Below, piece after piece: positions 15,480 through 20,430 of a DNA stretch of 64,000 bases. The notes beneath the pieces are model-generated. The model was not told where the DNA came from and did not search any database. It saw nothing but the letters and a program-made list of their open reading frames with translations. Source of the stretch: Podarcis vaucheri (taxonomy: Eukaryota); the NCBI GenBank assembly GCA_965113315.1, contig OZ220374.1; one strand, 5' to 3'. Both the position numbers and the translations under genes were made by a program. How positions within the stretch are numbered: the first letter of the stretch is position 1; each line of letters opens with the position of its first letter.

Positions 15480-16245
15480 GCACATAAAAGAGCATTTGAA
15501 AAGAGATGCAATATATAAACGTTTATATGCTAATGTCAGAAGCCTTGAAGCAGAGATGGGAGGATTTGAGTGCTTGGTACTAAAAAGAGAATATAGATAT
15601 AGTGGATATATCAGAAACCTTGTTGGAGCAGTGGAAATCATTAGGATGTGGATCTCCGAGGATATAGAATCTTTAGAAAGAAATGTGTTGGGGATCATGT
15701 TGCTCTGTATGTCAGAGGGCACAGATTCCCCCCAAATAAACAGAAAATGTAAGATGCACAAACTGCTCCACAGAATCACTGTGGGTGGAAATGCTAGATG
15801 CCAAAGGTAATTTAGTACTGCGGGCATACGACCAAAGCCCCTGATGAAAACTCAGAAATCAGGAAGGCAGCCGAAGGGATAAATGTTGAAAAATGTGTGG
15901 CTAACCCTCACATTCACTGGCTAAATGTACATTTAGGTTTTGCAATTGTGACTTTAAACAATTATAGTGTAATCCTATGCATGTTTACTCAGAAGTCGCT
16001 GTGTTCAATGGGACTTACAACCACAGCAAGTATGGTTAGGATGGCAGCTGTAGTCAAAACAATTACAGGGCAATCCTATGCATATTTACTCAGAAGTCAC
16101 TGTGTTCAGGGGGACTAAAAATGTGGTTGGGATTCCAGCTGTAGTTGCTTAGCAGACTAGAGAGAAGGCTTAGGCTTTATCCTGAATGGTGCTGAGGACC
16201 TGGCACAAGACAGAAGCACTGTCGAGCTGTTCAGCTGAGCTATAT
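15480..16245 (+). mobile_element. Degenerate CR1 LINE, endonuclease region (left part, interrupted by the L2)
   Basis: Broken translation LYANVRSL.AEMG.FECLVLK...I.ET and, at ~16170-16230, FILNGAEDLAQD, resembling CR1 'LDLIL.GA.DLV'. Interrupted by short repeats at ~15960-16145. Confidence 0.75.
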
Positions 16246-16252
16246 GCACACT

Positions 16253-16732
16253 CTGCCGCTCTGCCGGTGAGTCTTGGGGAGGACCGCTCCCCCTGCAAGC
16301 CCATTCTCCACCTTGGGCCTGGGGGCGGGCCCCAGACTCCACCTCAGCATATAAGGCCCCAAGGAGGCCTCGGGACATCGCTGCTGCCGCTCTGCCGGTG
16401 AGTCTTGGGGAGGACCGCTCCCCCTGCAAGCCCATTCTCCACCTTGGGCCTGGGAGTGGGCCCCAGACTCCACCTCAGCATATAAGGCCCCAAGGAGGCC
16501 TCGGGACATCGCTGCTGCCGCTCTGCCGGTGAGTCTTGGGGAGGACCGCTCCCCCTGCAAGCCCATTCTCCACCTTGGGCCTGGGAGTGGGCCCCAGACT
16601 CCACCTCAGCATATAAGGCCCCAAGGAGGCCTCGGGACATCGCTGCTGCCGCTCTGCCGGTGAGTCTTGGGGAGGACCGCTCCCCCTGCAAGCCCATTCT
16701 CCACCTTGGGCCTGGGGGCGGGCCCCAGACTC
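16253..16732 (+). repeat. 131-bp tandem monomer array (~3.7 copies) at the LINE 5' end
   Basis: Units start at 16253, 16384, 16515 and 16646 and are near-identical; the ORF track repeats the same peptides with a 131-nt period. Confidence 0.97.
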
Positions 16733-17013
16733 ACCACCATCACAACTCGAAGGACACTGCTGCTGTGGCAGCAAATGTTTAACCGTGTTATATATTTTAA
16801 AGTGTTTTAAAAGTGTTTTTATTTTTTACTTTGTTGTACCACCAGAAACGGTGGTTTTTTATCCATGTATTCTTATTTGTTTTGTTTTATTTTGGGTTGG
16901 GGTGGGACGGTTTGTTGAGTGGGGTGGGGATTGGTTTTGCTTTGGTGTAATTGTTTTTTTCTTTTTTTTCTTTTTTTCCTGTTTGTTTGTTTGTTTGCTT
17001 TTATACTTTGTAA

Positions 17014-19986
17014 ATGGAGGCGAGTATGAGGCCTGGGATTCCTACTGTGGAGGGGCGAGGGAGGTATGGCGGTGGGGGCAGATGGCATAGGCGAAGGGGA
17101 TCGAGATATGGATATGCTCGTACCCCTTCCAATCTGCGCCCCATCCCGAGAGACGAGGGTAGGGTGAGAAAGGATTACTCACCTCCGTCACTGGTGTTGT
17201 GCAATGCCAGGTCTATAGGCAACAAAACCGCCACCCTGCGAGACTTCATCATCTCGCAGGGGGTCGACCTGGCTTGTGTGACGGAGACCTGGGTGCGCGA
17301 AGGGGTAACTGTTACCTTACGAGAGATGGCGCCCCCGGGTTTCTCCGTCCTCCACCAGTCACGGACTGTGGGCCGGGGGGGAGGGGTGGCATTATTAATC
17401 CGGGAAGACTGTTCTTTCAGGGCTCTACCACCGCCATCGATCCCCGGCATTGAATGTGTTGGCCTAGTGTGGGGCTCCGAGGTGAGCTTGGCTGTCTGGC
17501 TGGTGTACCGGCCACCTAGCGCACCAGCAGCCACCCTGTCAGGCCTGCTGGAGGCGGTGGCCGGCTGGGCCTTGGAGTTCCCTAACCTATTGGTATTGGG
17601 GGACTTCAACATCCATGCCGATGCCACTCCCTCCTCACAGGCTCTGGACCTGGTGTCTTCCATGGCGACACTAGGGCTCTCCCAGTTTGTTTCGGGCCCC
17701 ACACATCAAGCAGGCCACACGCTGGATCTGATCTTTGGCGTCGGTATAGATGTGATCCTGTCTCCTTCGATGAAGGTGCCATGGTCGGATCACTATGCTC
17801 TGAAAGCCAGGATTGATGTTCCACCCCCACCCTGCTTAGGTGGTGAGCCGATTTGGGCTCGCCCGCGGAGGCTGATGGACCCTGATAGATTCCGTCAAGC
17901 CTTGCGGGACCTTTCTCCCCCTGGCGACTCATTGACTGAGCTTGTTGAGGGCTGGAATACCCAGCTCCTGGCAGCCATCAATGAGATCGCACCTAAGCGC
18001 CCTCTGCGACCCCGCAGAAACCGGGCTCCCTGGTTTACTGAGGAGCTCCGGAAAATGAAGCGGGACCTCAGACGGCTAGAGCGAGTATGGCGGGGTGCCC
18101 GTGACGGAGCCTCAAGAACATCTTATAGGGTTTTTATGAAAACCTACGAGATGGCAGTGAAGGCCGCCAAGAAGTCCTACTTCTCGGCCTCCATTGCATC
18201 CGCTAGCTCTCGCCCGGCACAATTATTTAGTATAATTCGGTCTTTAACGTCCCTCGAAGGACAGCCAAATTTAAATAACAATTCGACACATAGCTGTGAG
18301 GCATTTGCGAGCTTTTTTGCGGAGAAGGTCCTGTCGCTCCGCCATGACCTCCCTGCCAATTTGGATACAATAAAAGAACTGGAGGCCCCTCGACTGTCCT
18401 CGGGTCCAGTATTGGACCACTTTGACCGGATATCCCCAGCCGATGTGGACAGACTCCTCCGAGCTGGAAAGCCCACCACTTGTCCTCTCGACCCGTGCCC
18501 GTCTTGGCTGATTAGAGCATGTCCAGACGAGGTGCGGGCCCCCCTGGGGGATATCATCAATTTGTCCCTTGGCATCGGGACATTCCCAGGGGAACTGAAG
18601 GAGGCAGTGGTGCGTCCGCTCTTAAAGAAAACATCATTAGATCCCTCAGATCTATCCAATTACCGCCCAGTTTCGAATCTTCCATTCCTGGGCAAGGTGA
18701 TTGAGAGAGCGGTTGCTGAACAGCTTGGTAGGTTTCTGGATGAAACATCGGCTCTGGATCCATTCCAGTCCGGCTTCCGCGCTGGTCATGGGACCGAGAC
18801 GGCTCTGGTCGCCCTAACAGATGATCTCCGTAGACAGCTGGATCGAGGCGGGTCGGGGCTGCTGATTCTTCTAGATCTGTCAGCAGCTTTCGACATGGTC
18901 GATCACGAACTTTTGGACCACCGCCTCGCCGACGTGGGGATCCAGGGCGCAGTCCTTCAATGGCTGCGCTCGTTTCTCTCTGGTCGGGGACAGAGGGTGG
19001 CGCTTGGGGGGGAACTGTCATCCCGCCACTCCTTGGTGTGTGGAGTGCCTCAGGGTGCGATTCTCTCCCCGATGCTTTTTAACATCTTTATGCGCCCCCT
19101 CGCCCAGCTTGTCCGGAGTTTTGGGCTGGGCTGCCATCAGTATGCCGATGACACCCAACTCTATCTGTTGATGGATGGCCATCCTGACTCGGCCCCAGAC
19201 ACACTGATCAGATGCTTGGAAGCTGTGGCTGGATGGTTACGTGGGAGCCGGTTGAAGTTAAATCCTTCGAAGACAGAGGTCCTCTGGCTGGGACGGGACG
19301 ATATGGGATTGAGGGGGCAACTCCCATCTCTTGCGGGGGTGCAATTAGTGCCAGCACCGTCCGTTAAGAGTTTGGGTGTAATCTTCGATACCTCCCTCTC
19401 TATGGAGGCGCAGATTGCAGCTATAACAAAGGCGGCATTTTTTCATCTCCGCCAAGCTAAGCAGTTGGCCCCTTACCTCTCTCGCCCTGACCTAGCCACT
19501 GTGATCCACGCGACGGTCACCTCCAGACTGGATTATTGTAACTCGCTCTACGTGGGGCTGCCCTTGAGACTGACCCAGAAACTCCAGCGGGTGCAGAATG
19601 CCGCAGCGAGACTCCTTACGGGGTCTTCGCTGCGGGATCACATTCATCCGGTGCTATACCAGCTGCACTGGCTCCCAGTGGAGTACAGGATCAGGTTTAA
19701 GGTGCTGGTTTTAACCTTTAAAGCCCTATACGGCCTAGGACCCTCGTATCTACGGGACCGCCTCTCCTGGTATGCCCCACAGAGGAACTTACGGTCCTCT
19801 AATAAAAACATCTTGAAGGTCCCAGGCCACAGAGAGGTTAGGCTGGCCTCAACTAGAGCCAGGGCTTTTTCGGCTGCGGCTCCAACCTGGTGGAACGCTC
19901 TGTCACAAGAGACAAGGGCCCTGCAGGACTTGACATCTTTCCGCAGGGCCTGCAAGACAGAGCTGTTCCACCAGGCCTTTGGTTAG
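17014..19986 (+). CDS. L2 LINE APE endonuclease / reverse transcriptase (990 aa)
   Basis: APE motifs CNARS, VTETW, VYRPP, GDFNIH, TLDLIF, SDH. RT motifs NYRPVSNLPFLGK, QSGFR, LDLSAAFD, GVPQG, YADD, KSLGV. L2-type C-terminus RLDYCNSL, HIHPVLYQLHWLP, RAFS..AP..WNAL. Confidence 0.96.
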   Translation: MEASMRPGIPTVEGRGRYGGGGRWHRRRGSRYGYARTPSNLRPIPRDEGRVRKDYSPPSLVLCNARSIGNKTATLRDFIISQGVDLACVTETWVREGVTVTLREMAPPGFSVLHQSRTVGRGGGVALLIREDCSFRALPPPSIPGIECVGLVWGSEVSLAVWLVYRPPSAPAATLSGLLEAVAGWALEFPNLLVLGDFNIHADATPSSQALDLVSSMATLGLSQFVSGPTHQAGHTLDLIFGVGIDVILSPSMKVPWSDHYALKARIDVPPPPCLGGEPIWARPRRLMDPDRFRQALRDLSPPGDSLTELVEGWNTQLLAAINEIAPKRPLRPRRNRAPWFTEELRKMKRDLRRLERVWRGARDGASRTSYRVFMKTYEMAVKAAKKSYFSASIASASSRPAQLFSIIRSLTSLEGQPNLNNNSTHSCEAFASFFAEKVLSLRHDLPANLDTIKELEAPRLSSGPVLDHFDRISPADVDRLLRAGKPTTCPLDPCPSWLIRACPDEVRAPLGDIINLSLGIGTFPGELKEAVVRPLLKKTSLDPSDLSNYRPVSNLPFLGKVIERAVAEQLGRFLDETSALDPFQSGFRAGHGTETALVALTDDLRRQLDRGGSGLLILLDLSAAFDMVDHELLDHRLADVGIQGAVLQWLRSFLSGRGQRVALGGELSSRHSLVCGVPQGAILSPMLFNIFMRPLAQLVRSFGLGCHQYADDTQLYLLMDGHPDSAPDTLIRCLEAVAGWLRGSRLKLNPSKTEVLWLGRDDMGLRGQLPSLAGVQLVPAPSVKSLGVIFDTSLSMEAQIAAITKAAFFHLRQAKQLAPYLSRPDLATVIHATVTSRLDYCNSLYVGLPLRLTQKLQRVQNAAARLLTGSSLRDHIHPVLYQLHWLPVEYRIRFKVLVLTFKALYGLGPSYLRDRLSWYAPQRNLRSSNKNILKVPGHREVRLASTRARAFSAAAPTWWNALSQETRALQDLTSFRRACKTELFHQAFG

Positions 19987-20181
19987 GGCACAGCCTGACT
20001 CCCTCCTTCAGCAATCTTTACAATACTTTAGTTTATGGTTGCCATTAATTTTGATTTTAATTAATTCTTATGATGTTTTTATATTGTTGCACTTTTTTAG
20101 TGTTGTTAGCCGCCCTGAGCCCGGCTTCGGCTGGGGAGGGCGGGATATAAATAAAAATTTATTATTATTATTATTATATAT

Positions 20182-20430
20182 TTTGAGACAAAAGTTCAAT
20201 TTGGCCAGGATTAATTTCAAAATTGTAAACTTTAATAAAAGGGGAGGGGGAGTTGAAATGAATCATCATGGTGGAAAATCTTATTTACTGGCAATTGTTT
20301 AAAACCACTATAATCAAAGCTGACCTAGAATGCATGCCACAGAATAAGAGAGGTGCAAACATTTCTGGATTACCCAATAGGCAAACTGTGTACAAACTGT
20401 TCAGGGCACCAGCAAAGCACGGCACCAAAA

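What the first reader, a model, noticed from the sequence alone, without database searches (positions are those of the whole stretch)
16246..16732. L2 LINE with a tandem promoter-like cassette at its 5' end: GC box, TATA and splice donor in each 131-bp monomer
Seen: complete monomers contain GGGGCGGG or GGGAGTGGG, then TATAAGG (16350, 16481, 16612), a CA dinucleotide ~27 nt later, and CCG|GTGAGT (16267, 16398, 16529, 16660). The element's 5' edge (16246-16253) lies 27-34 nt downstream of where the TATA of a preceding monomer would be (16219), close to a TATA-directed start site. Variants run A-B-B-A, implying recent unit duplication. Known: monomer arrays act as promoters in mouse L1 and Dictyostelium TRE5-A; I do not recall a TATA-type array described for a squamate L2. 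Inference: each round of retrotransposition starts behind one monomer's TATA and loses it, while remaining monomers promote the daughter copy and tandem duplication refills the array.
Basis: partly seen in the sequence, partly recalled or inferred. Interest (0 to 1): 0.8.

Follow-up and report, generated by a model that had tools for sequence, protein, structure and literature searches.

The report
Promoter-like repeat array on lizard L2
A very recently inserted, intact jumping gene (an L2-type LINE) in a wall-lizard-type genome carries at its front end 3.7 near-identical 131-bp repeats, each built like a small TATA-box promoter; this is probably how it restarts transcription after each jump, much as mouse L1 does, but promoter activity has not been shown.

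Summary
A 131-bp x 3.66 tandem array sits at 16253-16732. Its units differ at only two positions, in the order A-B-B-A. TATAAGG occurs 3 times, CCG|GTGAGT 4 times, and each unit has a GC box or its GGGAGTGGG variant.

New here: contigs from another read set of the same species, and from a second species, join the 5' flank (to 16248-16251) to the 3' flank (from about 20177). The whole 3925-bp unit 16252-20176, array included, is therefore one young, polymorphic L2 insertion without a target-site duplication. Its 5' end lies 33-34 nt behind where the preceding TATA would be.

The monomer sequence is multicopy in both species. The array is GC-rich but is not a CpG island.

A monomeric Pol II promoter, following the logic of mouse L1Md, is the best reading at about 50%. 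It remains unproven.

I found no prior description for L2 or CR1 elements. The scan has not noted this array elsewhere; one unchecked note (s1-855139) reports a different 153-bp "possible LINE promoter" array in the same genome.

The parts
16252..20176 (+). Complete L2-type LINE insertion (3925 bp), polymorphic or absent in other read sets, with no target-site duplication
   Evidence: X1 contig 2 (265 nt, depth 35.9) covers 16111-16251 with 141 nt; its remaining 124 nt equal 20177-20300, and site 20243 is covered in X1 at the same depth of 35.9. X6 contig 25 (570 nt, depth 76.4) covers 15967-16248, and site 20243 is covered at depth 76.4. X15 and X16 contigs also leave the window at 16248.
16253..16732 (+). 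Tandem array of 131-bp monomers, 3.66 units (A 16253-16383, B 16384-16514, B 16515-16645, partial A 16646-16732)
16321..16329 (+). GC box GGGGGCGGG (Sp1/KLF-like) of unit 1; the same motif is at 16714-16722 in unit 4; the variant GGGAGTGGG is at 16452-16460 and 16583-16591
16350..16356 (+). TATAAGG of unit 1; also at 16481-16487 and 16612-16618; 34 nt upstream of the next unit's first base
16264..16272 (+). CCG|GTGAGT 5'-splice-site/U1-binding consensus, 14 nt after the unit start; also at 16395, 16526 and 16657. These are the only GGTRAGT sites in the element.
16733..17013 (+). Non-repeated AT/T-rich tether (34% GC). Its start (about 16745-16765) weakly resembles the monomer's 3' end but lacks the TATA.
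   Evidence: 8 of 500 shuffles reach the score
16820..16846 (+). The only plausible 3' splice site of the 5'UTR (pyrimidine tract, CAG|A, exon would start at 16846); hypothetical
17014..19986 (+). Intact single ORF of 990 aa: apurinic-type endonuclease (aa 64-260) plus reverse transcriptase (aa 541-790)
   Evidence: 96% identity to a Podarcis muralis RT protein whose cluster has 101 members
20110..20143 (+). 3' UTR stem-loop with cUUCGg loop
   Evidence: fold z = -3.1
20150..20176 (+). AATAAA followed by the (ATT)n microsatellite tail; end of the insertion

Best explanation
The array is the internal RNA polymerase II promoter of a currently or recently mobile L2-type LINE of lacertid lizards. 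It is built from 131-bp monomers that each carry a GC box, a TATA box 25 nt further on, and a start region about 30-34 nt after the TATA, at the monomer boundary.

Transcription from any TATA yields an RNA that still contains all downstream monomers. The daughter copy therefore begins at a monomer boundary, lacks the TATA that made it, and keeps the remaining TATAs (three in this copy) to fire again. Because each round starting from the first TATA costs one unit, arrays must be refilled by unit duplication; the identical B-B pair is a trace of that.

The GTGAGT that lies 14 nt after the start is most likely a U1-binding or 5' splice site inherited with the promoter. Its use is unknown.

Shown: the array's anatomy, its membership in the transposed unit, the youth of the insertion, its multicopy status, and the position of the 5' end. 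Inferred: promoter activity, the start site, the refill mechanism, and any role for the donor.
For: (1) Empty-site contigs show that the array transposed together with the ORF and that the copy is polymorphic.
(2) The refined 5' end at 16252/16253 corresponds to 33-34 nt after the first T of the virtual upstream TATAAGG.
(3) The GC box, TATA and start-proximal donor occur in promoter-like order and spacing in a 68% GC repeat, where TATA and GGTRAGT are each expected in under 0.3% of shuffles.
(4) Monomers are 98.5-100% identical and follow the layout of array, then non-repeated tether, then ORF, as in the mouse L1Md layout (PMC5381506, PMC6454616).
(5) Summed contig depth over the array is 2-3 orders of magnitude above the unique flanks in two species.
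(6) The ORF is intact and belongs to a large cluster of near-identical Podarcis proteins.
(7) RNA-level alternatives gave nothing: monomer fold z = -0.19, and no Rfam or Pfam hit.
Against: There are no transcription data. All runs laid were contigs, which cannot show starts, and the two 'RNA?' runs also hold the unique flank, so they may be DNA. Only one copy gives a 5' end, and chance agreement is about 5-9%. A distance of 34 nt is at the long edge of TATA-to-start spacing. G|CTGCC is not initiator-like; the nearest CA lies 7 nt upstream. TATAAGG is an imperfect TATA box. The array is not a CpG island (observed/expected 0.37 against 0.38 for the window), unlike L1 promoters. The motifs were picked out after the fact.
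Confidence: 0.5

Rival explanations
1. The array is a neutral tandem duplication of 5'UTR sequence. The TATA, GC box and GTGAGT are chance motifs. The real promoter lies elsewhere (in the tether or at the ORF start), or the family relies on read-through from host promoters.
For: No expression evidence. No CpG island. No initiator match at the 5' end. The phase evidence comes from a single copy. The motifs are short. Tandem duplications in LINE 5'UTRs are common and are not all shown to be promoters (PMC5381506).
Against: The joint occurrence of TATA-like and GGTRAGT motifs in the observed order was seen in 1 of 100,000 shuffles. The 5' end sits in the TATA-compatible window. A promoterless family would not readily reach the multicopy state seen in two species while keeping intact young copies.
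Confidence: 0.25
2. Origin hypothesis, compatible with promoter function. The monomer is a captured 5' end of a host gene (proximal promoter, a very short non-coding first exon, and the start of intron 1) that was recruited as a new L2 5'UTR and then multiplied.
For: A consensus 5' splice site 14 nt behind the inferred start is the signature of a first exon-intron boundary. Summed contig depth jumps about 5-fold between 16929-17075 and 17076-17222. X6 contigs diverge upstream of 17052. Together these suggest that related L2 subfamilies share the ORF but carry other 5'UTRs, the same pattern as 5'UTR replacement in L1 (PMC5381506).
Against: No source gene was identified, because no host genome could be searched. 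Upstream promoter DNA is not normally part of a gene's transcript, so capture would need an unusual upstream start. The tether start weakly resembles the monomer end, which suggests duplication of pre-existing L2 leader sequence instead.
Confidence: 0.2
3. Sub-hypothesis on the donor. The four GTGAGT sites are used. Either they splice to the one good acceptor at 16845|16846, removing the downstream monomers and half of the tether to give a short-leader mRNA, with unspliced RNA serving as the transposition template. Or they act as U1-binding sites that boost initiation and suppress the internal AATAAA signals at 18369 and 19801.
For: The donor matches the consensus at 8 of 9 positions and is kept in all four units. 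These are the only GGTRAGT sites in the element. There is exactly one pyrimidine-tract YAG acceptor before the ATG. Splicing of LINE leaders and splice sites in monomers are known for L1 (PMC2176070).
Against: No joint from a donor appears among the 15 joints listed (82 were not shown), and no RNA reads were available. A 14-nt first exon is unusually short. Spliced copies would be promoterless dead ends.
Confidence: 0.25
4. The array is not part of the element: either the L2 landed beside a pre-existing satellite, or the array is an assembly artefact.
For: None beyond the array lying at the edge of the element.
Against: Contigs from two species join 16248-16251 directly to the 3' flank, so the target site held no array. 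The array words are also present in independent runs.
Confidence: 0.02

Closest known systems
Mouse L1Md (A, Gf, Tf) and rat L1 monomeric 5'UTR promoters
   Same: Tandem monomers at the 5' end are followed by a non-repeated tether and then the ORF. The 5' truncation point of the first monomer is taken as the parent's start site. Monomer loss per round is countered by monomer duplication. Average arrays hold about 4-5 units (PMC6454616, PMC2176070, PMC5381506).
   Different: The clade differs: L2-type with a single ORF, against L1 with ORF1 and ORF2. There is no sequence similarity. The unit is 131 bp against about 200 bp (mouse) or about 650 bp (rat). The design is TATA plus GC box and the array is not a CpG island, whereas L1 monomers are CpG-rich and YY1/AP-1-driven. 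A sense-strand splice-donor consensus lies right behind the start. Function is untested here.
Dictyostelium TRE5-A A-module
   Same: A 5' module of a non-LTR retrotransposon acts as an internal promoter (from general knowledge; PMC3159450 deals with TRE5-A).
   Different: It is a single module rather than an array of TATA units, it sits in a tRNA-gene-targeting element of an amoeba, and it is unrelated in sequence.
Stringent-type L2 LINEs of fish (UnaL2, ZfL2-2)
   Same: About 4 kb long, a single EN+RT ORF, a 3' stem-loop followed by a short tandem-repeat tail that the RT recognises (PMC1636434, PMC4176376). The best non-squamate protein hits are cyprinid single-ORF proteins of about 985 aa at 38% identity.
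   Different: In the papers I could search, I found no description of a monomeric 5' promoter for these elements; their mobility assays appear to use foreign promoters (from memory, not checked).
Lizard (Anolis) L1 5'UTRs
   Same: Same host order, and young low-copy LINE families.
   Different: Boissinot and Sookdeo state that none of the lizard L1 5'UTRs shows tandem duplication (PMC5381506). The array here is on an L2-type element.

Membership tests
L2-clade (stringent-type) LINE | Single ORF with an N-terminal apurinic-type endonuclease and a reverse transcriptase | tested here: met
   Exo_endo_phos at aa 64-260 (E 3e-9) and RVT_1 at aa 541-790 (E 1e-36); one 990-aa ORF.
L2-clade (stringent-type) LINE | 3' UTR stem-loop followed by a short microsatellite tail instead of poly(A) | tested here: met
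   hairpin at 20110-20143, z = -3.1; (ATT)n tail ending at 20176.
L2-clade (stringent-type) LINE | RT groups with L2 rather than CR1, Rex1 or other clades in a phylogeny with reference elements | not tested
   No named reference L2 or CR1 sequences were available. The hits carry only generic names. The L2 label therefore rests on architecture.
Monomeric LINE promoter (L1Md type, functional class) | Tandem monomers at the extreme 5' end, then a unique tether, then the ORF | tested here: met
Monomeric LINE promoter (L1Md type, functional class) | The array is part of the transcript and the transposed unit | tested here: met
   the empty-site contigs skip 16252-20176.
Monomeric LINE promoter (L1Md type, functional class) | 5' ends of full-length copies cluster at one phase of the monomer (the start site), and monomer number varies among copies | tested here: inconclusive
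   Only this copy could be read, and its end is at the unit boundary, 33-34 nt after the TATA.
Monomeric LINE promoter (L1Md type, functional class) | Demonstrated promoter activity or mapped transcript starts (reporter, CAGE) | not testable with these tools
   Only contigs were laid; no raw RNA reads were available.
TATA-box Pol II core promoter | TATA box with its first T about 28-34 nt upstream of the start | tested here: met
   TATAAGG lies 34 nt before the unit boundary, which is the observed 5' end of the element. The spacing is at the long edge of the range.
TATA-box Pol II core promoter | Initiator-like sequence (pyrimidine-purine, YYANWYY) at the start | tested here: not met
   The sequence at the boundary is GCTG|CTGCC. 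The nearest CA is 7 nt upstream at 16376-16377.
CpG-island LINE promoter (human or mouse L1 type) | CpG observed/expected above about 0.6 over the 5'UTR | tested here: not met
   array GC 68%, CpG observed/expected 0.37 (window 0.38, ORF 0.65).

The most novel reading that the evidence does not exclude
An active L2-clade LINE of lacertid lizards has replaced its leader with a host-gene-like TATA promoter plus first-exon/splice-donor cassette and multiplied it into an array. TATA-directed starts at the monomer boundary drive retrotransposition, and the start-proximal U1 site in every unit is functional, either for leader splicing or for protection against internal poly(A) signals. This would be a convergent, mechanistically distinct counterpart of the mouse L1 monomer system outside L1 and outside mammals.
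Probability: 0.15. Interest if true: 0.75.

Novelty: new variant of a known kind. Interest (0 to 1): 0.55.

Why it matters
How LINEs carry or regain a promoter across rounds of 5'-truncating retrotransposition is understood mainly from mammalian L1. L2 and CR1 elements dominate many non-mammalian vertebrate genomes, yet in the papers I could search I found no description of their promoters. A young, polymorphic, intact L2 whose leader is an array of TATA-type units would give a tractable second system for three questions: monomer loss and gain, promoter replacement, and host silencing of a promoter that is not a CpG island. It would also provide a natural promoter for L2 mobility assays in squamate cells. 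If the array turns out to be inert, this is simply a tandemly duplicated leader on an ordinary young L2.

Tried and rejected
This blocked the key test of 5'-end phase and monomer number across the family.
- Two exact-pattern scans of metagenome contigs for the TATA part and the donor part of the monomer gave 0 hits.
- No other copy of the element or monomer lies in the 64-kb window.
- Rfam at E<=1 gave only sub-threshold noise over 15800-20400, so derivation of the monomer from an snRNA or other RNA gene is not supported.
- RNA folding of a monomer (z = -0.19) and of the whole leader (z = -1.3) shows no structure signal, so an RNA-structure role is not supported.
- The minus-strand ORFs of 92-117 aa that run through the array have no Pfam match. 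They are most simply explained by GC richness.
- The 'RNA?' runs X15 and X16 could not be used as expression evidence. They also contain the unique flank, X15 almost lacks the array, and X16 holds only a monomer contig at about 90% identity.
- Summed contig depths were not converted to copy numbers, following the tool's own warning.
'No prior description' therefore rests on seven full-text searches only.
- The hypothesis of a pre-existing satellite or an assembly artefact is rejected by the empty-site contigs.

Full report
**Observation**

The stretch 16253-16732 is a clean tandem array: period 131, 3.7 copies, 98% matches, TRF score 932.

- Written in register, there are three complete units (16253-16383, 16384-16514, 16515-16645) and one 87-nt partial unit (16646-16732).
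- The units differ only at offsets 71 and 73. Units 1 and 4 read GGGGGCGGG; units 2 and 3 read GGGAGTGGG. This gives the order A-B-B-A, with units 2 and 3 identical.
- TATAAGG starts at 16350, 16481 and 16612. CCG|GTGAGT occurs four times, with the GT at 16267, 16398, 16529 and 16660.
- No further copy of either motif block lies in the 64-kb window.
- In 100,000 dinucleotide shuffles of a monomer, a TATA-like hexamer arose in 0.14%, GGTRAGT in 0.26%, and both in the observed order once. This test was chosen after the motifs had been seen, so it only says that the motifs are not a by-product of composition.

**Surroundings**

- The array is followed by a 281-bp AT/T-rich unique "tether" (16733-17013, 34% GC).
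- Next comes an intact 990-aa ORF (17014-19986) with an apurinic-type endonuclease and a reverse transcriptase.
- The 3' UTR has a cUUCGg hairpin at 20110-20143 (fold z = -3.1), then AATAAA and an (ATT)n tail ending at 20176.
- The best protein relative is a Podarcis muralis RT protein at 96% identity, representing a cluster of 101 members. Anolis relatives reach 62% and cyprinid single-ORF proteins 38%. The host is therefore a lacertid, which agrees with earlier notes of the scan.
- I accept "L2-type" on architecture: a single EN+RT ORF with a stem-loop and microsatellite tail, as in UnaL2 and ZfL2 (PMC1636434, PMC4176376). I did not place the RT in a tree.

**New evidence: an empty site**

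I laid the contigs of four public runs on 15900-20300.

- In X1 (organism A; flank contigs have no differences from the window), a 265-nt contig of depth 35.9 covers 16111-16251 with its first 141 nt. Its other 124 nt are exactly the length of 20177-20300, and site 20243 is covered in X1 at that same depth of 35.9.
- In X6 (organism D; about 1% flank divergence), a 570-nt contig of depth 76.4 covers 15967-16248, and site 20243 is covered at depth 76.4.
- Contigs of X15 and X16 also leave the window at 16248.
- The joint row itself is among the rows the tool did not print. The join is therefore inferred from lengths and depths, but four contigs agree on the break.

It follows that 16252-20176 (3925 bp), array included, is one insertion. 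It is absent from at least one haplotype of the same species and from a second species. It is young, and it has no target-site duplication. This excludes a pre-existing satellite or an assembly artefact, and it shows that the array was part of the transposed RNA.

**The 5' end**

The element begins at 16252/16253 (T, or C of CTGCCGCTCTGCCG|GTGAGT). In the internal units that position is the unit boundary, 34 nt after the first T of TATAAGG and 14 nt before the donor.

This is compatible with TATA-directed initiation, though at the long edge of the usual spacing. The local sequence (GCTG|CTGCC) is not initiator-like; the nearest CA lies 7 nt upstream. With one copy, the chance of landing in such a window is roughly 5-9%, so this is modest support.

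**Copy number and spread**

Summed contig depth over the array bins is 13,000-35,000 in X1 and 2,600-55,000 in X6, against about 30-80 for the unique flanks. The tool warns that these figures are not copy numbers. They do show that the monomer is multicopy in two species.

Depth rises about five-fold between 16929-17075 and 17076-17222, and X6 contigs diverge upstream of 17052. This suggests sister subfamilies that share the ORF but carry other leaders.

**Composition and alternative roles**

- The array is 68% GC, but its CpG observed/expected ratio is 0.37, the same as the window (0.38) and lower than the ORF (0.65). Unlike L1 promoters, it is not a CpG island.
- An RNA-structure role finds no support (monomer z = -0.19, leader z = -1.3).
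- Rfam gives nothing above noise.
- The minus-strand ORFs through the array have no Pfam match.
- The tether's first 30 nt weakly resemble the monomer's 3' end without the TATA (8 of 500 shuffles reach the score). This hints that the array grew by duplication of an older leader.

**The donor**

The four GGTGAGT sites are the only GGTRAGT sites in the element. The leader holds exactly one reasonable acceptor, CAG|A at 16844-16845 behind a pyrimidine tract.

A leader intron (16267, 16398, 16529 or 16660 to 16845) is therefore possible, as is a U1-binding role; internal AATAAA signals lie at 18369 and 19801. No joint from a donor is among the 15 listed, 82 joints were not shown, and no raw RNA reads were available. 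Use of the donor is open.

**Most likely mechanism (about 50%)**

The array is a monomeric Pol II promoter in which each unit supplies a GC box, a TATA box and a start at the unit boundary. Daughters start at a boundary and keep the downstream TATAs. Arrays shrink by one unit per round from the first TATA and are refilled by unit duplication; the B-B pair is a trace of this.

This is the logic published for mouse L1Md, where the truncation point of the first monomer marks the parental start site, and where monomer duplication maintains promoters by an unknown mechanism (PMC6454616). Average arrays there hold about 4-5 units (PMC2176070).

**Rivals**

- An inert duplicated leader with chance motifs: 25%.
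- Capture of a host promoter, first exon and donor as the origin of the monomer: 20%. This is compatible with the main reading.
- The array is not part of the element: about 2%, contradicted.

**Comparison and novelty**

Monomeric LINE promoters are known for L1 of mouse and rat. Lizard L1 leaders are reported to lack tandem duplication (PMC5381506).

Seven full-text searches found no description of a monomeric or TATA-type promoter for L2 or CR1 elements. Novick et al. 2009 is not held, and Repbase and Dfam could not be consulted.

I therefore rate it a new variant of a known kind, with function unproven.

**Limits**

The decisive family-wide test of 5'-end phase and monomer number could not be run.

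Noticed in passing
window 16929-17222: Summed contig depth rises about 5-fold from the tether to the ORF start in both DNA runs, and X6 contigs diverge upstream of 17052. Related L2 subfamilies seem to share the ORF but carry different leaders, which would be 5'UTR replacement as in L1.
   Followed up: partly
window 15960-16110: The 5' flank holds two adjacent copies of a SINE-like motif (AATCCTATGCATRTTTACTCAGAAGTC...). X1 and X6 contigs show a back-joint from 16095 to 15999 with 11 letters in between, so the number or arrangement of these copies differs in other read sets.
   Followed up: no
window 16838-16861: A perfect hairpin (ACCACC-AGAAAC-GGTGGT) is followed by T6. It overlaps the only good splice acceptor of the leader. 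Its meaning is unknown.
   Followed up: no
window 16895-17000: A G-run block (GGGTTGGGGTGGGACGG...GTGGGGTGGGG, a possible G-quadruplex) is followed by about 60 nt of T-rich low complexity just before the ATG.
   Followed up: no
window 18369 and 19801: Two sense-strand AATAAA hexamers lie inside the ORF, besides the terminal one at 20150.
   Followed up: no
window 16157-16774, minus strand: Four overlapping minus-strand ORFs (92-117 aa) run through the monomers, three of them starting at an ATG. The two longest were scanned and have no Pfam match. Probably an effect of GC richness.
   Followed up: partly
window 17014-17180: The ORF opens with an Arg/Gly-rich stretch of about 55 aa before the endonuclease domain. 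The best Podarcis database protein (890 aa) covers only 89% of the query; which end it lacks was not checked.
   Followed up: no
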